Shown here one piece after another: positions 12,697 through 63,535 of a stretch of 64,000 bases of DNA (position 1 is the stretch's first letter; every line of letters starts with the position of its first letter). Position numbers and translations under genes: made by a program. The notes under the pieces are model-generated. The model did not search any database, had not been told where the DNA came from, and saw only the letters and a program-made list of their open reading frames with translations. Source of the stretch: Prasinococcaceae sp. CCMP 1430 (taxonomy: Eukaryota; Plantae; Prasinodermophyta); contig RQSC01000015.1 in the NCBI GenBank assembly GCA_013416795.1, forward strand, positions 399,255 through 463,254. The letters are read 5' to 3'.

Positions 12697-15600
12697 TCAG
12701 AACGACTGCTGCTGGGCGACGCCGCTGAGCGGGCACGTGCCGAACTCGCCCACCCAGGTGTTGAAGCTGCCCTTGTTCGCGCACGGCAGAATGGCGGGCG
12801 CCCCGGCGAGCGCCACCCGGACCAAGGAGTGGCTCTCCACGGGCGAGCCCGTGATGCAGCATTCGTCGCTGACCGCCTTGCACTCGTGGCACATCGCGGC
12901 CGCCTCGTACGTTTGCGCGCCACAGGACGCGCACGCGCGCGTCGGAAGCACCTGCTCGACCTGCTGCTGCATGCTCATCTCCAAGACTTGGTCGCGCACC
13001 GCCTCGCGGTCGTCCTCGTTCTCGAGGTAGTGTGCCGCCGGAATCGCAAAGTCGAAGGGAATGTCGGTCTGCACGTAGTCGCTGTTGTCGAGCTCAAGCG
13101 CCGATGCGTCGGCGTCCTCGTCGATCGCCTCTGTGATGTCCAAGAAGCGGTTCAAGAAAACGAAGGCGCTCGAGTGGCGCCCCGCCTCCCTGCAGGCCAT
13201 GCCGGCCTCCAGGAACGCCTTGTCCGCGGGGACCTCGCCCACGTATCGCAGGATGGACGTGCGCGCAGACGCCGCGATCGAACGGAGCGCCTGGGCCTTC
13301 GCGGGCTGCTGGGCGGCGCGCGCGGCGGCCACTGCGGCGACGTTCGCCCAGTGCGCGACCTTCAGCTTTTTCTCAAAGTCGGTCAAGTCGTTGGGGTCCG
13401 CCTCGGAGCCGCCGGCCCGCATCGCGCACATCAACGAGTAAAGCATGCCCTTCAGGTGCTCGAGCCCGTCGGTCGATCGACTGGACAGGACCTCGCGCGC
13501 GAGCAGCCGGTACATCTCGTAGTGCGCCGGCTGGGCGGGGCAGCCGTTCTGAGCCAGCGCCGCGCACCCCCCGACGAAGTCCCCGGACTGGCAGCAGTAC
13601 TTGGCGTGCTTGAGCGCATACGCCATTGCCGCCTCGCCGCCCTGCTCCTTGGCCAGCTCGTGCACCTTGTTCCACTGGCCCTGCTGCGCGAGCACCTCGA
13701 TCCCTGCGCTCACGTTGCCCTGCTGCATGAGCGCCCCGGCGTCGCCGACCGCCGCGAGCGCTGCCGCGTGCTGCTCCTCGGCCCAACGCACCAGCTGCGG
13801 CCCGCCTGCCGTCGCCGCGTGCCGCGCGCGCTCCCAGAGCTTGGCGCGCAGGTACGCCTCAACGGCGTCTCTGTGCGCGTCGACGCCCTCGAGCAGCTCG
13901 CCCGCCTGCTCGAAGCGACCGATATCCGACAGCCGCCGCGCACACACCCCGACGACATCGGCCGAACGCTCCGGGGCCTTGTCGATGCTCAACTTGCCCG
14001 CGCGCTCCCACGCCTGCTCGAGGAGGTCAAGATCGGAGCTGTGCTCCTTCGTGATGTCCAGGTAGCAGTCGATGGCGCGCGAGAAATCGCGGCCCCTTTC
14101 CAGCGCTTGCGCTCGTGTCAGCAGCGACGCGGCGCTGGCGCCCGCCGCGCTCGTCCCCCCCCCGCCGCCGCCGCCGCTCGCCATCGATTGCGCGAGCGCG
14201 GTGTGGATTTCGGCCACCATGCTCGGCGCGTAGTCCTCGGCGACGCGAATGGCGTCCTCCCACTTCGACGCATCGCGGAACATGTGCACGGCCATGTCGG
14301 GTCGCTTCCCCTTGAGGAAGAGCTGCTCGGCGCGCGCATGCTCCCCGGCCTCTGCCGCCACTTTGCCCTGCGCCGCGCAGATGTCCGGAATGGAGCCCGG
14401 GTCGTGCGATTCGGCCACGCGCAGCGCGCGATCCCAGTCCTGCTGGTGCACCCACATGTCGATGGCCTCCTTCGGCTTGCTGGCTTTCACGAATTCGCTC
14501 TCCGCCTCGTCGAAGCGCCCGTCGTCCTCGAGCGCCATGGCGTACTTCAGATGCACCTCAGGCAGCTTGTGATTTGCGCCGGCGGCGCGCGTAAGCTCGA
14601 ACGCGTGCATGAACGCGCCGCTTTCCACCGCGTAGTCGATGGCACTCTCCATGAGTCCAAACTTGGTCAGCAGCTTGGCGCCCTCCTCGCCGCCTAGCGA
14701 CACCGCCCACGCGTACGCCACCTGCTTGGACGCGCTTGCGCCGCCGTAGGCCTTGGCAACCCGGATGGCGTCGTCCCACCGGTCGTGCGTGCGGTACATC
14801 TGCACCACGCCCTTCCACTCCTGCGCCTCCAGGAAGTGGTGCTCGGCTTGCTTGAGGTCGCCCTCGCCCTCGAGCTGCTGCGCGAGGTGCAGGTGCGTCT
14901 CCGTGAGCAGGTCCTTGCGGTAGGTGCCCACCAGGCGCACCATTTGATCGTACATCTTCGCCTTCTTGTACATGTTGATCGCCATATCCTGCTGCTTGAC
15001 CGCGAGGTACATGCGCTCCGCCTCCTTGTAGCGCGCTGCGGCCTCGAGCTCGCGCGCGCGCCGCGAGTAGATGACGGACGCCTCGGAGTCACTCATATGG
15101 TGCACGGCCACGCGGTGCGCGGCGTCCCAGCGGTCGGCGCGCGTGTACATCTCCACGGCGTCAGCGGGCGCGCCGCAGCGCACGTAGTACCGCTCGGCGT
15201 CCTCGTACTGCTTGGACGCCTCGTAATGTCCGGCGATGCGCGCGAAGAAGGGTGTCGACACCTCAGCCGGCTGCTGCTCGGCAATGGCCGCCGCCTTCGC
15301 CCACTGGCGCGCCTCCAGCGCCGCCTCGATGGCCTTGATGCTCTGGCCGGCCTCGATGTAGTGCGACACGGCCTCGTCGGCGTGGCGCTGGCTCATCAGC
15401 CAGTCGGCCCACTCGTCCTCGAGCGAGACCACGTCCTCCGGGGACGTGCGGCGGCACAGCTCCACCACCTGCCGGTAGCACCGCCCCTCGCGATAGGCGC
15501 GCGCCGCGCGCCGCTCGTCCCCGAGCTCCTCGAAGAAACGGCCCGCGCGCTCGTGCATGCCCGCGGAGAGCAGGTTGGCGGCCACGTTCTCCAGCAGCTC

Positions 15601-18045
15601 GGAGGGGTACTGTCCGCTGGGGTTTTCCGCCACGGCCTGCGCTGCGCGGCCGGGCATGCCGGCCTTGAGGTACAGCGAGATGGCAGCGACGACGTCGCCC
15701 TCGGCCTCCTTGATCTCGCCGGCGCCCTCCTCTTGCCTGGTGTTCAAGAGCCACTGGTAGTGGGCGCGCTTGAGGCCCTTGAAGTCGGGGTGCGCCTTGG
15801 CGTCGGCCACATCGATGGCGTCCTTCCAGCGCTGCGCCTCGGTGTACATCTGGATGCACTCGTTGACCTTGCCTTGCTCCAGCAGGACGGCCTCGGCCAC
15901 CTTCCACTGCTTGTTGAGCACGGCGAGTCTGGCGCGCACGCCGGCGGCATCCATGCCGTCGCCGCCGAACTCGGCGGCGTGCGCGGAGGCCGCGGCGCGG
16001 GTTTCGCCGACGTACTTGGCCTTCGCCATGTCGCCTATAGCCGCAAAGCACTGCTCCGCCACTGGCAGGTGCTTTGACTCGAGGGCCATCTCGCTGAGCT
16101 TGAGCCACATGCCCTCTGTCTCCGCGTTCAGCTCGAGGGGCTCGAGCATGTTGATGGCGCGGTAGTAGTCCTTTCCCTCGACGGCGCTGCCGAACTCGAT
16201 CAGCGCCTCGTCCAGGGCGTAGCTCACGCTCTGAATGGACTCGTCGACGATCACCTCCGTGCGCCCACCCGCGCGCTCGATGTCGACCACCTCGCCGCGA
16301 ATCGGGAAGACGGTCTTGGACTCGGGGGTCGCCACCGAGTACCACACGCACAGGTTGCCGCGGTTCTGCGCGACCACCACGTCCGAGTCGGGCACCCACT
16401 GGACGTAGCTGACGTAGTTGAGCAGCGTGTGGCGCTCCTGGTCGCGCAGGCCGTACATGTACAGCTGGCGGCGCTTGTCGCGGAACAGCAGATGCGAGCC
16501 GCGCGGGTTGAGCTCGAGCCAGTCGATGCGACTCTCGTTGTGAACGGTGGCGACCGTGGTGCCTGACACGAAGTCCTGGATCAGGATCGTGTGCGCGTCG
16601 ATGAGGTACGCGATCATCTTGGTGTCCGGGTTGCCGCCGTGCCCCTTGCTCAGGCGCACGCTGATCAGGAAGGGGCTCATGTGCTCGGTGCGGCAGGTGC
16701 CGAGCATCTCGCTCTCCCCGTACTCGAGCAGGCAGAGCTCGCCAGCGTTGTAGATCATGCACACCGCGGGGTTGTCGAAATAGAACTTCTCGGAGCCGGT
16801 CACCGCCCACTCGATCTCGCTCAGCTTGCAGCTCTCCAGATCGCCGAGCAGCAGGGTGGCGGGCGTCTGGGCGACGATGTATTGGTCAGGTCGCTGGGGG
16901 GCTGGCCCCTCCTCGCTGGGCTTCGAGTCGGAGTAGATGTTGATGCGCTGCACTTCGTAGCCGAGGTGCGACTTGAGCACGATGCGGCGACCGGTGCTCA
17001 GCCTCTTCACAATGACCTGCGAAGGGCTCACGTACGTGAACTCGAAGCGCCCCTGGTAGATGTGCCGGCGGGTGCCGGCGTCAAAGAGCTCGACGCCGCC
17101 GCGGAGGCCGCCCACGGCGAGGCGGCTGCCATCCGGGCGCCAGGTCATCGCGCTGATTGTGTACATGTTCTCGAGCACCTTGGAGCTCGCCTCGGACCAC
17201 TGAGTGGCGTGCCCGCCGCCCGCGGAGCTGCGCGTGAACACGTAGAACTTGTCGAACGAGCCCGCGACGGCCGCGTGCCCGGTCGGGTTGAAAGCCGCGC
17301 TCCCGAACTCCGACGAGCCGGCAGGCTCGTTCGAGTAGTCGAAGGTGCTCAGCCGGGACCCTGAGGCCGTGTCGTAGAAGCTGACCTTGCCGTCGGCGCC
17401 CGCAGCGAGCACAGACGCGCCGCACGAGAGCGCGTACGGCGCGCACGAGTGCTGGAAGAGCTTGACCTCGCGCCCGCCCCCGTCCTCGAAGCTCAGGCGC
17501 AACACGGAGCCGTCGAGGTGACCGGAGAGGACGGCCGTGCCACCGTTGCTGGAGCACATGCTCACCACCGAGGAGCCGCCCGGGTGCTTGTAGAGCGAGT
17601 CCGACTTGTTCGTGCGCAGGGCGCCCATGCGCACCTTGCCATCGGCGCCGCCGAAGATGACCTCGTACGGCTTCGCCGTGAGCCACGCCGCGGCGGTCAC
17701 CGCGACGCTGCACTTGAACTTGTTGCAGATCGACTTCTTGTCCCCCCACCTCTCGCCGAGCTTGTAGATGAAGGCGATGTTATCACTCTGTGCCACGAGC
17801 AGCTTGGTGCTGTCTGGCGAGAACGCGAGCCCGCGAACGACGTACGTGCGCGGCCCCTCGGCCTCGCGCGGCTTGGTGCCGAACTTGTCGCGCCGCTCGC
17901 CGGCGGGGTCGTCGAAGAGGTGAATGACGCGGTCGGACGTGGCCACCGCCAGGCGCATCGAGTTGGGCGACCACGCCACCGCCGTCACCTTGTTGGATCC
18001 GTCCGAGCTCGGGGCGAGCGCGCCCTTGGCATGGCGCAGCTGCAT
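12697..18045 (-). CDS. IFT172: Intraflagellar transport protein 172 (WD40 + TPR), single exon, about 1782 aa
   Basis: MQLRH start, WSPNSMRLAV, RDKFGTKP, WGDKKSICNKF, YEFTYVSPSQVIVK-like segment, TEHMSPFLISVR, and C-terminal ADKAFLEAG / AFVFLNRFLD. The ATG is placed at 18045 by family length, not at the ORF-track start. Confidence 0.93.
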   Translation of the reverse strand: MQLRHAKGALAPSSDGSNKVTAVAWSPNSMRLAVATSDRVIHLFDDPAGERRDKFGTKPREAEGPRTYVVRGLAFSPDSTKLLVAQSDNIAFIYKLGERWGDKKSICNKFKCSVAVTAAAWLTAKPYEVIFGGADGKVRMGALRTNKSDSLYKHPGGSSVVSMCSSNGGTAVLSGHLDGSVLRLSFEDGGGREVKLFQHSCAPYALSCGASVLAAGADGKVSFYDTASGSRLSTFDYSNEPAGSSEFGSAAFNPTGHAAVAGSFDKFYVFTRSSAGGGHATQWSEASSKVLENMYTISAMTWRPDGSRLAVGGLRGGVELFDAGTRRHIYQGRFEFTYVSPSQVIVKRLSTGRRIVLKSHLGYEVQRINIYSDSKPSEEGPAPQRPDQYIVAQTPATLLLGDLESCKLSEIEWAVTGSEKFYFDNPAVCMIYNAGELCLLEYGESEMLGTCRTEHMSPFLISVRLSKGHGGNPDTKMIAYLIDAHTILIQDFVSGTTVATVHNESRIDWLELNPRGSHLLFRDKRRQLYMYGLRDQERHTLLNYVSYVQWVPDSDVVVAQNRGNLCVWYSVATPESKTVFPIRGEVVDIERAGGRTEVIVDESIQSVSYALDEALIEFGSAVEGKDYYRAINMLEPLELNAETEGMWLKLSEMALESKHLPVAEQCFAAIGDMAKAKYVGETRAAASAHAAEFGGDGMDAAGVRARLAVLNKQWKVAEAVLLEQGKVNECIQMYTEAQRWKDAIDVADAKAHPDFKGLKRAHYQWLLNTRQEEGAGEIKEAEGDVVAAISLYLKAGMPGRAAQAVAENPSGQYPSELLENVAANLLSAGMHERAGRFFEELGDERRAARAYREGRCYRQVVELCRRTSPEDVVSLEDEWADWLMSQRHADEAVSHYIEAGQSIKAIEAALEARQWAKAAAIAEQQPAEVSTPFFARIAGHYEASKQYEDAERYYVRCGAPADAVEMYTRADRWDAAHRVAVHHMSDSEASVIYSRRARELEAAARYKEAERMYLAVKQQDMAINMYKKAKMYDQMVRLVGTYRKDLLTETHLHLAQQLEGEGDLKQAEHHFLEAQEWKGVVQMYRTHDRWDDAIRVAKAYGGASASKQVAYAWAVSLGGEEGAKLLTKFGLMESAIDYAVESGAFMHAFELTRAAGANHKLPEVHLKYAMALEDDGRFDEAESEFVKASKPKEAIDMWVHQQDWDRALRVAESHDPGSIPDICAAQGKVAAEAGEHARAEQLFLKGKRPDMAVHMFRDASKWEDAIRVAEDYAPSMVAEIHTALAQSMASGGGGGGGTSAAGASAASLLTRAQALERGRDFSRAIDCYLDITKEHSSDLDLLEQAWERAGKLSIDKAPERSADVVGVCARRLSDIGRFEQAGELLEGVDAHRDAVEAYLRAKLWERARHAATAGGPQLVRWAEEQHAAALAAVGDAGALMQQGNVSAGIEVLAQQGQWNKVHELAKEQGGEAAMAYALKHAKYCCQSGDFVGGCAALAQNGCPAQPAHYEMYRLLAREVLSSRSTDGLEHLKGMLYSLMCAMRAGGSEADPNDLTDFEKKLKVAHWANVAAVAAARAAQQPAKAQALRSIAASARTSILRYVGEVPADKAFLEAGMACREAGRHSSAFVFLNRFLDITEAIDEDADASALELDNSDYVQTDIPFDFAIPAAHYLENEDDREAVRDQVLEMSMQQQVEQVLPTRACASCGAQTYEAAAMCHECKAVSDECCITGSPVESHSLVRVALAGAPAILPCANKGSFNTWVGEFGTCPLSGVAQQQSF

Positions 18046-29299: not shown

Positions 29300-29392
29300 C
29301 TAGGGTCTAGGGTCTAGGGTTTAGGGTCTAGGGTTTAAAGGGTTTAGGGTTTAGGGTTTAGGGTTTAGGGTTTAGGGTTTAGGGTTTAGGGT
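29300..29392 (+). repeat. Interstitial telomere-type repeat (TTTAGGG with TCTAGGG variants)
   Basis: About 13 units, with variant units on the left and 7 consecutive perfect TTTAGGG on the right. Confidence 0.9.
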
Positions 29393-56142: not shown

Positions 56143-59100
56143 TCAGCTGGGGCTGAAGCCGTCGTCCCCACCGGCCTCCTTCGGCGAATAAGAGGGCCTT
56201 CGGAGAGAGAAGATGGGTGATTGGGCACACATAGAGTGCGAGTCAGCGCAGCTCATACACATGCGAGTTTGGACAAGAATGAATCGCTGTTGGCGCGTAG
56301 GTCCACACGCACAGGCTGGCAAAAACGAGCGGCATGAGCGCAACGTACGATGTTGGCGAGTACGAGGGACTCGTGGGCGAGTACGATGGACTGTGCAGAG
56401 AGCACAGCAGCGCGACCGCGGTCGCCAAGGGCGTGCCAGACAAGCCGCCAAGCGTCAGTTGTCAGTCGAGCAGAAAAATCAAAAATCGAAAACGAAACAT
56501 GGAAGAGGGTGGCACGAGCGCGCAGCGAGCTCGACGGGGCGCAGTCGCGCGCCACCAACCTTGTCGGCGAGTACGAGGGGCTCGTGGGTGAGTACGATGG
56601 ACTGTGCAGAGAGCACAGCAGCGCGACCGCGGTCGCCAAGGGCGTGCCAGACAAGCCGCCAAGCGTCAGTTGTCAGTCGAGCAGAAAAATCAAAAATCGA
56701 AAACGAAACATGGAAGAGGGTGGCACGAGCGCGCAGCGAGCTCGACGGGGCGCAGTCGCGCGCCACCAACCTCGTCGGCGAGTACGAGGGGCTCGTGGGC
56801 GAGTACGATGGACTGTGCAGAGAGCACAGCAGCGCGACCGCGGTCGCCAAGGGCGTGCCAGACAAGCCGCCAAGCGTCAGTTGTCAGTCGAGCAGAAAAA
56901 TCAAAAATCGAAAACGAAACATGGAAGAGGGTGGCACGAGCGCGCAGCGAGCTCGACGGGGCGCAGTCGCGCGCCACCAACCTCGTCGGCGAGTACGAGG
57001 GGCTCGTGGGCGAGTACGATGGACTGTGCAGAGAGCACAGCAGCGCGACCGCGGTCGCCAAGGGCGTGCCAGACAAGCCGCCAAGTGTCAGTTGTCAGTC
57101 GAGCAGAAAAATCAAAAATCGAAAACGAAACAAAAAATCAGCCTCGGAAGGGGGCGGCGCGAGCGCGCAGCGAGCTCGACGGGGCGCAGTCGCGCGCCAC
57201 CAACCTTGTCGGCGAGTACGAGGGGCTCGTGGGTGAGTACGATGGACTGTGCAGAGAGCACAGCAGCGCGACCGCGGTCGCCAAGGGCGTGCCAGACAAG
57301 CCGCCAAGTGTCAGTTGTCAGTCGAGCAGAAAAATCAAAAATCGAAAAAGAAACAAAAAATCAACGGAAGAGGGCGGCACGAGCGCGCAGCGAGCTCGAC
57401 GGGGCGCAGTCGCGCGCCACCAACCTCGTCGGCGAGTACGAGGGGCTCGTGGGCGAGTACGATGGACTGTGCAGAGAGCACAGCAGCGCGACCGCGGTCG
57501 CCAAGGGCGTGCCAGACAAGCCGCCAAGCGTCAGTTGTCAGTCGAGCAGAAAAATCAAAAATCGAAAACGAAACATGGAAGAGGGTGGCACGAGCGCGCA
57601 GCGAGCTCGACGGGGCGCAGTCGCGCGCCACCAACCTCGTCGGCGAGTACGAGGGGCTCGTGGGCGAGTACGATGGACTGTGCAGAGAGCACAGCAGCGC
57701 GACCGCGGTCGCCAAGGGCGTGCCAGACAAGCCGCCAAGCGTCAGTTGTCAGTCGAGCAGAAAAATCAAAAATCGAAAACGCACGGACGGGGGCGGCGCG
57801 AGCGCGCAGCGAGCTCGACGGGGCGCAGTCGCGCGCCACCAACCTCGTCGGCGAGTACGAGGGGCTCGTGGGTGAGTACGATGGACTGTGCAGAGAGCAC
57901 AGCAGCGCGACCGCGGTCGCCAAGGGCGTGCCAGACAAGCCGCCGAGCGTCAGTTGTCAGCTCAAAAACATTGTGAAACGAAACAACAAGAATCAATCGC
58001 GAACGAGAGCGCGCTCGACGGAGCGCAGGCGCGCGCCACCAACCTCGTCGGAGAGTACCCCGGGCTTCGCGGGGAGCAGAGCATGGCCGCGGAGGTCGCA
58101 CAGGGCGAGCCATACAAGGCAGCCGCGCCGCGCGTCACTTGTCAGCAACCAATGAACAATTGTGAAACGAAACAACAAGAATCAATCGCGAACGAGATCA
58201 GCGCGCTCGACGGAGCGCAGGCGCGCGCCACCAACCTCGTCGGAGAGTACCCCGGGCTTCGCGGGGAGCAGAGCATCGCCGCGGAGGTCGCACAGGACGA
58301 GCAATACAAGGCAGCCGCGCCGCGCGTCACTTGTCAGCCGAGCAGCACCAGAAAACAATTGTGAAACGAAACAACAAGAATCAATCGCGAACGAGGTCCG
58401 CGCACACAAGAGCAGCGCGCTCGACGGAGCGCAGGCGCGCGCCATCCACCTTGTTGGCGAAAACCCCGGCGATGTTGGGCTGAACCCCGGGCTCGGCCCC
58501 ACTCCGCCCCCACCCCCACCACCGCTCGCCCCGTACGGCGAGAACATGACGCTCCCCAGCCCGCCGCTCCTCAGCGGGCTGCTGCCGTGCGCCATGGGCG
58601 ACATGGCCGCCGAGAGCACGGGCGTCCTGCCACCCTCGTTGATCCCGCCCTCCTCTCCCACCGTCGCCAATTCGATCGCGTCCGCCAGCCCATCCTCCTC
58701 GAGCATGATGTCGAACGCCCCGGTGCCCAGCGGCCCGAGCTGGCCGAGCATCACCTGCGCGCTCACCCCCCTCAGGTCGTCCTTTTCACTAAACATGGCG
58801 GCCTGCATCAGGATATCGACGGTCTCCTCAAAGGAGCACCGCATGAGCGGCCCCGAGTTCAACCGATTGATCCCGTGCCTGCTGATCGACATCAGGTGGC
58901 CCCTGTACGTCATGACGTCGCACATGATCGCCAGGTGCCTGTAGTTCACGTAGCTCCCGTCGAAGGAGATCACGTTCCTCACCTCGTTCAGCAGCGCCCC
59001 GCGCACGGCCTCCACCCCCAGCACCTCCATCACCTCCACCAAATGGTTGCTTGTCGTCCTGCTCCCATCGACGTCCTCCTCGCTCATCACTCTCAGCAAG

Positions 59101-62100
59101 TTGACCCCCTCCGTGTCCAGCATCCACTCGTTGGCCGTCACGAACCCCGTGTCGGCACTCGGGTCGTGCCTGGTCCGCTTGGTCTCACGAATGAACACCT
59201 TCTTGATGTCCGGCACGCCCCGAAGCGCCATCGAGTTCAGCATGTTCATCTCGATCATCTTCAAAAACATGTCGTCCTCGCCGTCGGATCCTCCAGAAGA
59301 GCCCTTCTCCCCGTCCATGACGTCCTCCATGATCCTGAGCCGCATGACCAGCTTCTCGGCGTTGTCATCGCTGTAAATCACGTTCAGATCGTCCCCAAAC
59401 TCATCGGTGATCTTCCGCGCGACGTCCTCCATCCGCAAGCTCTTGTCCACCATCATCTCGCGGTTCAATTCGATCCTCAGCATCCACGGACTCGCCCTGT
59501 CCAAATCCACCTCCTCATCGGGCATCTCGTGGTACGCCTCCACGAACTCCTTGTCCTCCGCGATCACCGTTCCCCTCACGTCGGGGTCGTACCAGATCTC
59601 AGTCATGGCAGTCACGCTCTTCAGAGTGGTGTACTCCAGCCTGCACTGCACCGCCTTGGCCTCCTCCCTGTCCCTCCCACACCTGTCGCTCAAGTACACG
59701 CTCAAGCTGGGCGTCTTGACCGTCTTGGCAATGTTCATGATCTCCTTCAGCCTGGGCACGCCCAGCGTCACGTTCTTGGCCGACACGCCCGCGTAGTGGA
59801 AGGTGTTCAGCGTCATCTGCGTGGCGGGCTCCCCCACGCTCTGCGCGGCGATCGTGCCGATCATCTCGCCCGGGTGCACCAGGCTCTGCGCGAAGCGGCT
59901 CTCGATTTCACCCAGCACCCAGTCCAGCCCGGCCTCGTTCAGCCGATACCTGCTGCACACCTCTTTGGAACTCAGCGTCATGCGCACGAAGGCGCCGTAC
60001 AGCAACGTCGCGTTCCTCTGCGCCTCCTGGGACAGCCCGTCCTCCCCTGGAACCACGACCAATTTCTCGCAAAGCCGCGCGACTTTCTGCGCCACCTCCG
60101 AAGGACAGAGGTCGCTCTTCGGCTTCAGAAGCACCGAGTGCGATCCTTCGCTCTCGACGAACCTCTTCCGCGCGTTCCAGATCAGCCGGTCCAGGTTCAG
60201 CGGCAAGAACACCGAGTCATCGCCCGAGCTCAGCACCTCGCTGCGCAGCACCTGCAGGTCCTCGCGCAGCGCCCTCTCCTCCTCGCTCAGGATCGCAATC
60301 CTTGCGGCGTCCCCCCTCAGGCGCTCGAACACGTCCTTGTCCAAATACTCGCCCGCCTTGTCGACGTCAACGACGTACCGCCGATCGAAGGCAGCCTTGC
60401 CGCTCCTCAGGTTCTTGATCTTCTGCGACTCGATGTGCACGGCGTCCATCCCGTCCTCGCCGTAGAGGAACTGGATCACATCCCCGAGCGAGTTCCTCAC
60501 CGTGCCGTCGTACTGCGCGCTCAAGTCCTCCATGGCCTTCACCAGCCTTCTTTGAATATACCCCGTCTCGGCCGTCTTCACGGCCGTGTCGATGAGGCCC
60601 TCGCGGCCGCCCATGGCGTGGAAGAAGAACTCCTGCGGCGTGAGGCCGCGCAGGTAGCTGTTCTCGACGAAACCCCGACTCTCGGGACCGAAGTCGTCTT
60701 TCGTGAAGTGCGGCAGGGTCCGATCCACAAAGCCGAAGCGAATCCGTTTGCCCTCGACGTTCTGCTGCCCGACGCACGCCGTCACCTGCGAGATGTTGAT
60801 GAACGAGCCCTTGCTGCCCGCGTCGACCATCTGCTTCATGTTGTTGAGCTCCCTCAGCGAGCGCTGCGCGCGCTGGCCGGCGTCGTCGCGCGCCTTGTTG
60901 AGCACCTGGTTGACCTTGTTCTCGAAGCTCTCCTGCATCGTCCGCCCGGGCTGCGGCTCGAGCTGCCCGTTCTGCGCCTGCTGGATCAAGTCCTTCACCT
61001 GGCTCTTCGCGTCGGCGATCGTCTCGGTGATCTGCTTCATCGTCGCGTTGTCCGGGATGCCATCCCCGATGCCGATGGAGAAGCCGGTGTGCAGCAGCCA
61101 GTGGTTCACCAGCGTCTGCGTCTGGTTCAGGAAGCTGCGCGTGGCCGCGGGGCCGTGCTCCTGCCAGATGGTGTGCACGAGGCCGCCGGGCGCCGTCCCC
61201 ATCGACTTCTTGCACAGCATGCCGTGGAGCAGCTTGCCGCGCTCGATGCGTACCTGCGTGTCCCCGGCCGAGAAGTCCTTGATCTCGCCCTCCCGGTGCC
61301 CCGCGGCGGTGCGAGTCAGGTTGACGTCCGGCAGGAAGAGGTTGAACACCTGCTTGCCGGTCCACAGCGGCCTGGGCTTCAGGATGGCCGGCACGGGCAT
61401 CTTGCCCTGGAACTCCTCGGCCCACAGCATGATGTTCATCATGAGGTCCTTCTCAATGAAGCAATCCCTCTTGGTGATGTTGCGGCACCCCAGCAGGGTG
61501 TCCTGCACGATACCGATGACCGGCTTGTTGCCCTGCGGGCTGACGATGCAGCGCGGCACCATCATCATCTCGCTCACCTCGGCGCGCGTCTCGAACGTCT
61601 GCGGCACGTGCAGGTTCATCTCGTCGCCGTCGAAGTCGGCGTTGTACGGCGAGGTGACCGACAGGTTGAGGCGGAACGTGGAGTAGGGGAAGATGCGCAC
61701 CTTGTGCCCCATGATGGACATCTTGTGCAGCGACGGCTGGCGGTTGAAGAGCACCACGTCGCCGTTCTGCAGGTGGCGCTCCACCTTGAAGCCCACCTCG
61801 AGCGCCCGCTCGCTCGGGCCGAGGGCGTAGCGCAGGTCGATGCGCGAGCCGTCGGGGCGGATGATGTAGTTGGCGCCGCGCTCGCCGGGCGGCGGGTTGG
61901 GCCCGTTCTCCACGAGCTGCTGCAGCTTGTCGACGTTGTACGGCGTGACGCACTCCGGCACGGTGAGCGTCTGGGAGATGCTCAGGGGCACGCCGACCTC
62001 GTCGATCGAGATGTTGGGGTCGGCGGTGATGACGGTGCGCGCGGAGAAGTCCACGCGCTTGCCCATCAGGTTGCCGCGGATGCGGCCCTCCTTGCCCTTG

Positions 62101-63535
62101 AGGCGCTGGCAGATCGACTTGATGGGCCGGCCCGAGCGCTGCGTGCTCACCGGCACGCCGGGGATGGTGTTGTCCATGTACGTGATCACGTGGTACTGCA
62201 CGAGCTTGGTGTACTCGGCCAGGATGTGCGCGGGGGCGCCGAGCTCGTCCTGCTGCTTCAGCTTGGCGTTCGCGCGCACGATCTCGCTCAGCTTGTGCGT
62301 GCAGTCGTCCTCCGAGCGCCCGCCGTCCATGGCGACGCTGGGGCGCACCGCCGGCGGCGGCACGGGCATGGCGGTGATCACCATCCAGTCGGGGCGCGCG
62401 AACTCGGGGTCGAGGCCGAGCACGCGCACGTCCTCGTCCGAGATGCGGCGCAGGATCTCGTGCACGCGCTCCGCGCTGAGCTCCATCTTGCTCTCCTCGG
62501 GCGCGATCACGTCGGAGTCCGCGCCTTTCTTGGTCTTGAACTCGGCCATGAAGGTGATGCCGTCCTGCAGGGTGATCTTCGGCTGCAGCGCGTTGGTCGC
62601 CTCCGACACGTCGATGTTCTGGCTAGCCTGCGCGATGCGCGTGAGGCGCTGGAAGCCGTTCTTGATCCTGCGCGCGGCGACCATGCGGCGGTCGGGCTCG
62701 TTGCCGTCCGCGTCCTTCTCCGCACGCAGGCGCAGCTTGGACGTGAAGAAGCACACGCTGCGCAGGACCTTGAGCACGATCTTCACGAAGTGCGGGTGGA
62801 ACACCGGCTTGGCGAGGTCGATGTGGCCGAAGTAGCCCGGGCACTCGTTGATGTCGTTGCCGTCCGTCAGGCAGTTGAGCGCCTTGTCGACGGTGCCCAG
62901 GCGCAGGTCATTGACGCCGCCCGCCTTGGGCTTGCCCTTGTCCATCGAGTCGCCGGAGGTGATCTGCGCGACCGAATACCTCCGCTGCGGGGCGCGCGGC
63001 GCGAGCGGACGGCGAGCGCGCGTGCGCGGGGGCGGATGGGCGCACAGGGGTGCGCGCGGGTCGCAGGGCGCCATGCGAGCGCATCATCATTAGCGACGAC
63101 GGGATGCCGATGAGCTCGGCCCAGCTGCCTGCGTCTGGCGTCCGCGCGGGCGCGGGGCGCGCTCCCACAGCCTGGCCGCGACGCGATGCAACACGGCATG
63201 CGCGCCGCGGCAGCGGAGGCTAGGCTGGACGGGCGCGCTCGCGCGCTCGCGCTCGCGGCGCCCACTCTCGCGCGAGCGCATCGCGACGACGCGGGCACTG
63301 CGACGAGGCGCGTGTGCTGCGGCTCCCGCTGTGCGCGGCGCGGCGCCCCCGCCTCGCTCCGCTAGGGTTGCACCCATGCGCAGGCGCAAGCGAGGCCTCG
63401 CGACGCCACCCGCCGCCACGCCCTGTCGCGCGCACTCACCACCTCCTCGGGCGACAGGATGCCGAACTGCACCGCCTGCACGCGGCGCAGCTCGCAGCTC
63501 GAGTAGTCGAACTTGTCATGGACGGACGACGCCAT
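56143..63535 (-). CDS. RPB1: RNA polymerase II largest subunit; exons 63440..63535, 58450..62984, 58236..58256, 58044..58064, 57844..57885, 57636..57677, 57425..57466, 57205..57246, 56982..57023, 56771..56812, 56560..56601, 56349..56390, 56143..56197
   Basis: VQFGILSPEE, GKEGRIRGNLMGKRVDFSARTVIT, catalytic NADFDGD, bridge helix TAVKTAETGYIQRRL, trigger loop MTLNTFHYAG. Splicing at GT-AG sites gives FSPTSPG x2, YSPTSPG, YSPTSPS x17, YSPKEAGGDDGFSPS*. Confidence 0.95.
56349..58449. repeat. Tandem exon+intron array (units about 190-225 bp) encoding the CTD
   Basis: Eight 42-nt and two 21-nt heptad-coding cores, each followed by near-identical intron sequence. Confidence 0.95.

What the first reader, a model, noticed from the sequence alone, without database searches (positions are those of the whole stretch)
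56349..58256. Symmetric CTD exons allow in-frame tuning of CTD length by exon skipping
Seen: all ten internal exons are multiples of 21 nt and flanked by phase 2 introns that split a Ser codon. Skipping any subset keeps the frame and heptad register and removes exactly 1 or 2 heptads per exon. The donors (GTTGGT, GTGGAT) differ from the GTGAG/GTGCG/GTACG donors of other genes in this window, and two exons use AAG acceptors. Nine of 11 introns are 3n+1, so retention would shift the frame. Inference: Pol II could exist as a population of CTD-length isoforms. Since the CTD itself couples transcription to splicing, this could form an autoregulatory loop.
Basis: inference. Interest (0 to 1): 0.78.

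Follow-up and report, generated by a model that had tools for sequence, protein, structure and literature searches.

The report
Repeated mini-exon array encoding Pol-II tail
In the green alga Prasinoderma coloniale, the repetitive tail of RNA polymerase II is encoded by a young tandem array of near-identical mini-exons and introns; skipping them would stay in frame, but that follows from how the array was copied, and nothing here shows the cell uses it.

Summary
On the minus strand, the Prasinoderma coloniale RPB1 tail (CTD) is encoded by ten internal exons (2 x 21 nt, 8 x 42 nt). All are flanked by phase-2 introns; nine of the eleven intron lengths are 3n+1. Donors are GTGGAT, GTTGGT (x9) and GTACGT. 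Three acceptors are AAG.

These are not ten independent observations. The exons and introns are copies in a 192-211 bp tandem array: four introns are identical and two whole units are identical. One intron is an A/B recombinant, and a three-unit block has been duplicated. Symmetry, shared phase and shared odd donors are therefore inherited by copying.

The architecture is not conserved. Metagenome relatives are 96-99% identical in RPB1 intron 1 and the main exon, but nothing aligns in the CTD interval, where they show two other exon-intron layouts. The sister species has an intronless CTD.

No transcript data could be reached, so exon skipping remains untested. My estimate for regulated skipping is about 0.1. 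The best reading is that CTD length changes at the DNA level through amplification of exon-intron modules. The published gene model lacks the CTD.

The scan noted this stretch before (s1-399943). It also noted a look-alike array elsewhere that was judged a minisatellite (s1-396477).

The parts
63440..63535 (-). RPB1 coding exon 1 (32 codons, MASSVHDKF...PEEV)
   Evidence: The junction to the main exon matches the annotated protein P0121 and the sister-species proteins P0132/P0133, which look transcript-derived.
62985..63439 (-). RPB1 intron 1 (455 nt, GTGAGT...CAG), an ordinary intron used as comparator
   Evidence: It is about 96% identical to the Tara relatives.
58450..62984 (-). RPB1 main exon (catalytic core, linker and the first two FSPTSPG heptads); ends in phase 2 at donor GTGGAT
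   Evidence: Rpb1 Pfam domains 1-7 are recorded for the roughly 99%-identical P0001. It is 98.6-99.3% identical to the relatives.
58044..58449 (-). Type-A sub-array: intron I1 (193 nt), exon E1 (58256-58236), intron I2 (171 nt), exon E2 (58064-58044). The exons are 21 nt, encode (S)PGYSPT and use AAG acceptors.
   Evidence: units U1 and U2 differ by 10 mismatches and 2 indels.
57886..58043 (-). Intron I3 (158 nt), a recombinant: 5' part type A, 3' part type B
   Evidence: the 5' part matches I2 at 76 of 78 positions and the 3' part matches I4 at 76 of 80.
56349..57885 (-). Type-B sub-array: eight 42-nt exons (E3-E10) separated by seven introns I4-I10 (166-181 nt, GTTGGT...CAG)
   Evidence: I5, I8, I9 and I10 are identical, and U5 is identical to U8. 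The block U4-U5-U6 is duplicated as U7-U8-U9.
57844..57885 (-). Exon E3, 42 nt, two heptads
57636..57677 (-). Exon E4, 42 nt
57425..57466 (-). Exon E5, 42 nt
57205..57246 (-). Exon E6, 42 nt (synonymous variants TCA and ACA)
56982..57023 (-). Exon E7, 42 nt
56771..56812 (-). Exon E8, 42 nt
56560..56601 (-). Exon E9, 42 nt (synonymous variants TCA and ACA)
56349..56390 (-). Exon E10, 42 nt. It ends TC| before donor GTACGT and marks the 3' edge of the duplicated array.
56198..56348 (-). Intron I11 (151 nt, GTACGT...AAG). It is not part of the repeat family. Relatives have an intron at the same position and phase.
56143..56197 (-). Final coding exon, (S)PSYSPKEAGGDDGFSPS followed by the stop codon
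   Evidence: The peptide is identical in L005. The YSPKE end is shared with the sister species. Homology with L005 resumes 5 nt upstream of this exon.

Best explanation
This is the 3' part of the RPB1 gene of Prasinoderma coloniale. The C-terminal heptad domain of RNA polymerase II is encoded here by a young tandem array of exon-plus-intron modules: an intron followed by one or two heptads.

Shown: the modules are head-to-tail copies of 192-211 bp belonging to two sub-families, joined by a recombinant unit, with identical copies and a duplicated three-unit block.

Inferred: the array grew, and still changes, by unequal recombination or replication slippage between modules. CTD length is therefore set at the DNA level over evolutionary time. 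All modules are normally spliced intron by intron into one mRNA that encodes 21 heptad-like units: 2 FSPTSPG, 1 YSPTSPG, 17 YSPTSPS and a terminal YSPKEAG.

Exon symmetry, the single intron phase, the shared GTTGGT donor and the 3n+1 lengths are by-products of copying one in-frame unit. They are not design features for exon skipping.
For: Gene identity.
- The large exon is RPB1 and is 100% identical over the queried region to cluster P0001. That cluster contains the P. coloniale model PRCOL_00006783.

Array structure.
- Tandem Repeats Finder reports 211 bp x 7.5 copies and 192 bp x 2.4 copies.
- All ten units align. I5, I8, I9 and I10 are identical, and U5 equals U8. Each of U4, U5 and U6 is closest to U7, U8 and U9 respectively.
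- I3 is an A/B recombinant.

The exons are translated.
- All six variable exon columns are synonymous, including an AG-to-TC Ser-to-Ser switch.
- Exon-by-exon translation gives unbroken heptads.
- The final-exon peptide is identical in L005, and its YSPKE end is shared with the sister species.

The introns look genuine.
- Every intron has GT...AG, a CTGAC motif 45-77 nt upstream of the acceptor, and an AG-free zone from that motif to the acceptor. Four other window introns show the same pattern.
- The AAG acceptors are simply the first AG after that motif.

The layout is lineage-specific and recent.
- Relatives are about 96% identical in intron 1 and 98.6-99.3% in the main exon, yet give no blastn hit in the 2,252-nt CTD interval.
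- They carry other layouts. Type 2 has one 210-nt exon of ten heptads plus 6-, 21- and 9-nt exons.
- Type 3 has a different 21-nt exon and repeated intron.
- The sister species has an intronless CTD and shows 7 versus 8 SPSYSPT units among contigs.

Precedent.
- DNA-level expansion and contraction of the CTD is documented in yeast (PMC4882425, PMC7341143).
Against: No RNA evidence for the splicing model or for constitutive inclusion could be obtained. The window-type array is seen only in the reference strain: all 11 environmental members of the protein cluster start the CTD the type-2/3 way. Copy-number polymorphism of this particular array is therefore not shown. All relatives are metagenome scaffolds, most with 100-N gaps inside the CTD, so their repeat numbers are unknown and chimeric scaffolds cannot be excluded. 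The origin of the first intron of the module is unexplained. GTTGGT donors and AAG acceptors are unusual compared with the few other introns seen, so uneven splicing efficiency is possible.
Confidence: 0.8

Rival explanations
1. The symmetric modules are used as cassette exons, and regulated or condition-dependent skipping yields Pol II molecules with different CTD lengths, possibly feeding back on splicing.
For: Skipping any subset is in frame and in heptad register. The exons are very short (21-42 nt). GTTGGT/GTGGAT donors and AAG acceptors differ from the other introns seen. Experimentally altered CTD length changes alternative splicing in human cells (PMC11393077). In-frame products would escape nonsense-mediated decay.
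Against: There are no RNA or protein data. Every cited feature is inherited by copying one unit. All modules carry the same signals, so there is no exon-specific handle for regulation. The architecture is absent from relatives that are 96-99% identical in flanking RPB1 sequence and from the sister species. [quoted passage not shown] The intron folds are not unusual (z = -1.3 and -0.07).
Confidence: 0.1
2. The introns were inserted independently into a pre-existing contiguous heptad array by an introner-like mobile element with a preferred target site, not duplicated together with their exons.
For: The introns are near-identical and always sit at the same heptad position. A type-2 relative has a contiguous ten-heptad exon that could resemble the pre-insertion state. 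The array introns have a lower GC content (60-66%) than the other window introns (71-83%).
Against: No other copy of the intron was found in the remaining roughly 62 kb of the window or in the relatives' CTD regions. Spacing is strictly regular at two heptads. Exon variants travel with the units in a three-unit higher-order block. I3 is a recombinant between two unit types. I saw no target-site duplication.
Confidence: 0.07
3. The two 21-nt exons with AAG acceptors (and perhaps others) are not used. The first donor would splice directly to a later CAG acceptor, so the real CTD is shorter than modelled.
For: AAG acceptors are uncommon. The two 21-nt exons are identical, which is compatible with recent copying rather than selection.
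Against: AAG is the first AG downstream of the CTGAC motif in these introns, as it is for the final exon. The final exon's AAG acceptor sits at the same position in two relatives, and its peptide is conserved. Relatives and the sister species also encode SPGYSPT heptads at this point of the CTD.
Confidence: 0.12
4. Assembly artefact: the array, or its copy number, is a product of mis-assembly of repeats.
For: Tandem repeats with identical units are error-prone to assemble, and only one genome carries this version.
Against: The published genome is a PacBio assembly polished with short reads (PMC7455551), and an array of about 2.3 kb is within read length. The units carry ordered variants and a recombinant junction rather than a uniform collapse. 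There are no Ns in the region.
Confidence: 0.05

Closest known systems
Genetic instability (expansion and contraction) of the yeast RPB1 CTD coding repeats (PMC4882425, PMC7341143)
   Same: CTD length changes at the DNA level through rearrangements between near-identical heptad-coding repeats. The sister species here shows 7 versus 8 SPSYSPT units among contigs.
   Different: In yeast the repeat unit is the 21-bp coding heptad inside one exon. Here the unit is 192-211 bp and includes a complete spliceosomal intron.
Modular repetitive genes built from iterated exon-intron cassettes with homogenised introns, such as spider flagelliform and major ampullate silk genes (PMC9779670; Hayashi and Lewis 2000, from my own knowledge)
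   Same: Head-to-tail duplication of exon-plus-intron units, introns as alike as or more alike than the exons, and rapid turnover between close relatives.
   Different: Those are structural secreted proteins with long exons. Here the gene is an essential housekeeping enzyme subunit, and the exons are micro-exons of one or two heptads.
Fibrillar collagen genes with 54-bp-family exons (from my own knowledge)
   Same: Exons are integer multiples of the peptide repeat and all lie in one intron phase, so exon loss stays in frame. The arrangement is thought to derive from duplication of a primordial exon-intron unit.
   Different: Collagen exons are ancient and conserved in position across animals, and their introns are unrelated to each other. 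Here the copies are nearly identical and lineage-specific.
Titin PEVK and I-band exons, symmetric repeats whose regulated skipping sets spring length (from my own knowledge)
   Different: For titin, isoforms and a regulator (RBM20) are documented and the introns are long. Here no isoform is documented and the introns are short.
Introner elements of Micromonas, Aureococcus and other algae (from my own knowledge)
   Same: Families of near-identical introns of about 150-200 nt in a marine picoalga.
   Different: Introners are dispersed over many genes. These copies are confined to one tandem array and were duplicated together with their exons.

Membership tests
RNA polymerase II largest subunit (RPB1) with canonical CTD | Rpb1 domains 1-7 present in the encoded protein | tested here: met
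   Precomputed Pfam hits PF04997, PF00623, PF04983, PF05000, PF04998, PF04992 and PF04990 are recorded for P0001. P0001 is 100% identical to the window over the queried residues and about 99% overall. I did not run Pfam on the window translation itself.
RNA polymerase II largest subunit (RPB1) with canonical CTD | Tandem YSPTSPS-type heptads at the C-terminus | tested here: met
   Exon-by-exon translation with the two carried-over bases gives 21 heptad-like units in unbroken register. This depends on the splicing model.
Spliceosomal (U2-type GT-AG) introns | GT donor, AG acceptor, branch-point-like motif, and first-AG rule downstream of it | tested here: met
   All 11 introns have GT...AG, a CTGAC motif 45-77 nt from the 3' splice site, and an AG-free zone of 54-148 nt. 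Four other window introns show the same pattern.
Spliceosomal (U2-type GT-AG) introns | Removal from the mature mRNA | not testable with these tools
   No transcript of this lineage was found. Indirect support: without splicing the protein would have no Y-type heptads.
Cassette (alternatively skipped) exons | Exon length divisible by 3 with the same phase on both sides | tested here: met
   This is also an automatic consequence of in-frame unit duplication.
Cassette (alternatively skipped) exons | Both inclusion and skipping isoforms observed | not testable with these tools
   No RNA data could be reached.
Cassette (alternatively skipped) exons | Conservation of the alternative-exon architecture in close relatives (expected for functional alternative splicing) | tested here: not met
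   Relatives with 96-99% identical flanking RPB1 sequence have different layouts, and the sister species has no CTD introns.
Tandem array evolving by unequal recombination (concerted evolution) | Head-to-tail units with high identity, identical copies, higher-order blocks and recombinant units | tested here: met
Tandem array evolving by unequal recombination (concerted evolution) | Copy-number variation between individuals or strains | tested here: inconclusive
   Not observable for the window-type array, which is known from one genome only. The sister species varies by one heptad. The relatives' arrays are hidden in N gaps.
Introner-like mobile introns | Dispersed copies in many genes, with target-site duplications | tested here: inconclusive
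   No copy was found outside the array in this 64-kb window or in the relatives' CTD regions. The rest of the genome was not available.

The most novel reading that the evidence does not exclude
Because every module carries the same splice sites and any donor can pair in frame with any downstream acceptor, P. coloniale may produce a ladder of Rpb1 isoforms differing by one or two heptads per skipped exon. The distribution might shift with splicing kinetics or CTD kinase activity. That would give a post-transcriptional way to set CTD length and a feedback between Pol II and the spliceosome. A second reading, also not excluded, is that the Prasinoderma CTD locus is a hotspot where exon-intron modules are created and amplified repeatedly and independently. 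It would then be a natural system for watching intron gain in action.
Probability: 0.12. Interest if true: 0.85.

Novelty: new variant of a known kind. Interest (0 to 1): 0.58.

Why it matters
CTD length is a lineage-specific and functionally important property of RNA polymerase II. How it expands and contracts is known mainly from yeast, where the repeats lie in one exon. Here the unit of change includes a whole intron.

Three lineages with almost identical RPB1 cores have three different exon-intron layouts for the same peptide repeats, including exons of 6 and 9 nt. The sister species has no CTD introns at all. That makes this locus a natural experiment on rapid intron gain and turnover, and on repeat dynamics in an essential gene.

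There is also a practical point. The published P. coloniale gene model runs into the first array intron and lacks the CTD. Surveys of CTD evolution that use that proteome would wrongly score this early-diverging green lineage.

If in-frame skipping did occur, it would be the first case of CTD length set by splicing. The system is easy to test with long-read cDNA.

Tried and rejected
Transcript evidence. Protein searches with the last 250 and the last 700 residues of the main exon, sized to catch fragment-length products, returned nothing above about 60% identity. A 39-nt exon pattern and a 30-nt pre-CTD pattern each gave 0 hits in JGI metagenome contigs. Exons were translated one at a time with the two carried-over bases, and the joined-protein search was left out.

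Intron origin from heptad-coding DNA (intronization). Local alignment of both intron types against heptad-coding DNA of three lineages, on both strands, scored no better than shuffled sequence.

Copies of the intron elsewhere. None were found in the masked window or in the relatives.

Structured or known RNA in the introns. There were no Rfam matches at E <= 1. Minimum-free-energy folds were not better than shuffles.

An antisense gene. The plus strand has stop-free stretches of 605 and 594 codons across the array. A stop-free type-B intron (169 nt) occurs in 18% of dinucleotide-preserving shuffles, and the exon part is explained by codon bias. The Pfam hits are summed weak coiled-coil matches in which no single stretch passes. 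I rejected this as a by-product of repeating one stop-free unit.

Splice-site statistics. A codon-bias exon finder showed the window's genes to be intron-poor and yielded only four usable comparator introns. No quantitative splice-site strength model was built.
Full report
WHAT IS THERE. The finding lies on the minus strand. Reading the reverse complement of 58800-56140 shows the end of a very long open exon. This is followed by short pieces that encode YSPTSPS heptads, separated by non-coding stretches of 150-190 nt.

The long exon is RPB1. Its last 442 residues are 100% identical to protein cluster P0001 and 77% identical to a sister cluster, P0002. The best named relatives are only about 60% identical. 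Cluster P0001 contains the EukProt entry EP00793 Prasinoderma coloniale PRCOL_00006783, so the window is P. coloniale nuclear DNA. That genome is a PacBio assembly with 69.8% GC (PMC7455551).

CHECK OF THE OBSERVATION. Locating the donors and acceptors by script gives ten internal exons. Two are 21 nt, encoding (S)PGYSPT. Eight are 42 nt, encoding (S)PSYSPTSPSYSPT. All start and end in phase 2 inside a Ser codon.

The eleven introns are 193, 171, 158, 166, 169, 178, 181, 169, 169, 169 and 151 nt, and nine of them are 3n+1. Donors are GTGGAT (x1), GTTGGT (x9) and GTACGT (x1). The two 21-nt exons use AAG acceptors, and so does the final exon.

The final exon (56197-56143) encodes (S)PSYSPKEAGGDDGFSPS followed by the stop codon. 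Read exon by exon, the gene encodes 21 heptad-like units: 2 FSPTSPG, 1 YSPTSPG, 17 YSPTSPS and a terminal YSPKEAG.

I translated exons one at a time with the two carried-over bases.

ARE THESE REAL INTRONS AND EXONS? I could not reach RNA data, so this part is inferred.
- All 11 introns have GT...AG and a CTGAC branch-point-like motif 45-77 nt upstream of the acceptor. They also have an AG-free zone running from that motif to the acceptor (54-148 nt). Four other introns in the window have the same anatomy: RPB1 intron 1, which the annotated protein and the sister-species proteins confirm, and three inferred from coding potential.
- The AAG acceptors are simply the first AG after the branch motif.
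- All six variable columns in the 42-nt exons are synonymous, including an AG-to-TC Ser codon switch at the array edge. This argues that the exons are translated as heptads.
- The final-exon peptide is identical in a relative (L005). Its YSPKE motif ends the sister species' protein.
- Without splicing, the protein would stop after two degenerate F-heptads.
- The published model P0121 does exactly that. It reads into the first array intron and has no CTD.

THE REGULARITIES ARE COPIES, NOT INDEPENDENT FACTS. Tandem Repeats Finder reports a 211-bp unit x 7.5 copies (95%) and a 192-bp unit x 2.4 copies (90%). Aligning the ten [intron + exon] units shows two families.
- Type A (I1, I2) has an AAG acceptor and a 21-nt PG exon.
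- Type B (I4-I10) has a CAG acceptor and a 42-nt exon.

I3 is a recombinant. Its 5' part matches type A at 76 of 78 positions, and its 3' part matches type B at 76 of 80.

Introns I5, I8, I9 and I10 are identical, and units U5 and U8 are identical over 211 nt. Each of U4, U5 and U6 is closest to U7, U8 and U9 respectively. A three-unit block was therefore duplicated.

Within type B, substitutions are as frequent in exons as in introns, about 5% of columns. The homogeneity therefore reflects recency or conversion rather than selection on the introns.

Hence symmetry, the single phase, the identical odd donor and the 3n+1 lengths are inherited from one or two ancestral units. Any in-frame duplication of an [intron + n heptads] unit must produce symmetric exons.

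RELATIVES. Members of the same 90% protein cluster come from ENA and Tara metagenome scaffolds. Compared with the window:

| Region | Identity to the window |
|---|---|
| RPB1 intron 1 | about 96% |
| Main exon | 98.6-99.3% |
| CTD interval 58449-56198 (2,252 nt) | no blastn hit at E < 1e-5 |
| Final exon, 3' UTR and downstream | 81-87% |

Homology with L005 resumes 5 nt upstream of the final exon.

The relatives show two other layouts, each giving perfect heptad continuity with all introns in phase 2.
- Type 2 (L004, L010, L013): the main exon ends at SPG|GTGCGT. It is followed by a 6-nt exon, a 21-nt exon with an AAG acceptor, and one 210-nt exon of ten heptads. A 9-nt exon and the final exon, which also has an AAG acceptor, complete the gene.
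- Type 3 (L001, L002, L005): a different 21-nt exon with its own repeated intron is followed by 6-nt and 9-nt exons and a final exon whose peptide is identical to the window's. The intron motif occurs three times around a 100-N gap, so this is another exon-intron array, collapsed by assembly.

The sister species, at 77% protein identity, has an intronless CTD on an 11-kb genomic contig (L003). Its contigs differ by one heptad, 7 versus 8 SPSYSPT units.

All 11 environmental members of the cluster start the CTD the type-2/3 way. The window's version is so far unique to the reference strain.

Caveats: these are metagenome scaffolds, most have N gaps in the CTD, and chimeric scaffolds cannot be excluded.

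MECHANISM. The best-supported reading (confidence 0.8) is that the array arose, and changes, by unequal recombination or slippage between exon-intron modules. CTD length is then set at the DNA level, as documented for the intron-free yeast CTD (PMC4882425, PMC7341143). The modules are normally spliced intron by intron.

The repeat structure, the recombinant unit and the lack of conservation are shown. The recombination mechanism and constitutive splicing are inferred.

In-frame skipping is possible, and CTD length is known to affect alternative splicing when changed experimentally (PMC11393077). But I obtained no isoform evidence. Several points lean against a tuning device.
- The supporting features are by-products of copying.
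- All modules carry the same signals, so there is no handle for exon-specific regulation.
- The layout is not conserved even among near-identical relatives.
- The introns are short, which in other organisms goes with intron definition (my own knowledge).
[quoted passage not shown] It is low outside animals (PMC6142364).
- The intron folds are unremarkable, and no known RNA family is present.

I put regulated skipping at about 0.1. Harmless stochastic skipping at a low level is more likely but equally untested.

OTHER RIVALS.
- Independent introner-like insertions (0.07). No other copies were found in the window or the relatives, spacing is regular, higher-order blocks exist, and there is a recombinant unit.
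- Non-use of the AAG exons (0.12).
- Mis-assembly (0.05).
- Intron origin from heptad DNA is not supported.
- The long antisense open frames are a by-product of repetition.

COMPARISON WITH KNOWN SYSTEMS AND NOVELTY. The locus works like the iterated exon-intron cassettes of spider silk genes (PMC9779670) and, in its symmetry, like the collagen 54-bp exons. I found no paper describing a CTD encoded by an exon-intron array or CTD isoforms made by splicing. That library is incomplete. I therefore rate it a new variant of a known kind.

EARLIER SCAN NOTES. The same stretch was noted under another title (s1-399943), and its follow-up is withheld. Notes on this genome's introns with an AG-free 3' zone (s1-546063) agree. 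A look-alike 219-bp 'exon+intron cassette' array elsewhere was judged to be a minisatellite (s1-396477). That warns that such arrays need coding evidence. Here the coding evidence is the synonymous-only exon variation and the heptad continuity.

Noticed in passing
window 58450-58390 (minus strand); protein P0121: The published P. coloniale RPB1 model (PRCOL_00006783, 1557 aa) reads through the first array donor into intron I1 and ends '...FSPTRWMARACAPSSALL'. The annotated Pol II therefore has no CTD heptads beyond two F-type ones. This looks like an annotation error.
   Followed up: yes
L010:4966-6044, L004:9087-10400, L013:5270-6410 (type 2); L005:5253-6299, L001:4767-5058 (type 3): Close relatives encode the same CTD with different exon-intron layouts, including predicted 6-nt and 9-nt micro-exons. 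All introns are phase 2 although they split different heptad codons. Type 3 looks like a second, independent exon-intron tandem array hidden in an N gap.
   Followed up: partly
window 64000-55000 compared with L004, L005, L007, L008, L013: There is a sharp step in identity at the CTD: 96-99% upstream (intron 1, main exon) but 81-87% downstream (final exon, 3' UTR, flank). This could be a recombination or introgression boundary, or mutagenic repeat turnover. It is unexplained.
   Followed up: partly
window 56192-58152, plus strand: Two stop-free stretches of 594 and 605 codons run antisense across the array and give weak summed Pfam hits (Bap31_Bap29_C). A stop-free type-B intron occurs in 18% of shuffles, so this is a by-product of repeating one stop-free unit and not a gene.
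   Followed up: yes
window 57843-56391 (introns I4-I10): Length differences among type-B introns are all multiples of 3 (166, 169, 178, 181 nt). This rests on only three indel events and may be chance.
   Followed up: no
window 12700-18027 (minus strand), 58450-62984 (minus strand) and elsewhere: Genes in this window are intron-poor, with single coding stretches of 5.3 kb (the IFT172 region) and 4.5 kb (RPB1). Eleven introns in 2.3 kb is therefore a strong local outlier. The array introns are also less GC-rich (60-66%) than four other window introns (71-83%).
   Followed up: partly
L003:10300-10655; proteins P0002 versus P0132-P0136: The sister species has an intronless CTD, and its contigs differ by one heptad (8 versus 7 SPSYSPT). 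This is natural DNA-level variation in CTD length.
   Followed up: yes
window about 29360-29390, plus strand: TTTAGGG-type telomere-like repeats lie inside the window. I saw them while testing candidate acceptors, and another scan note had already flagged them.
   Followed up: no
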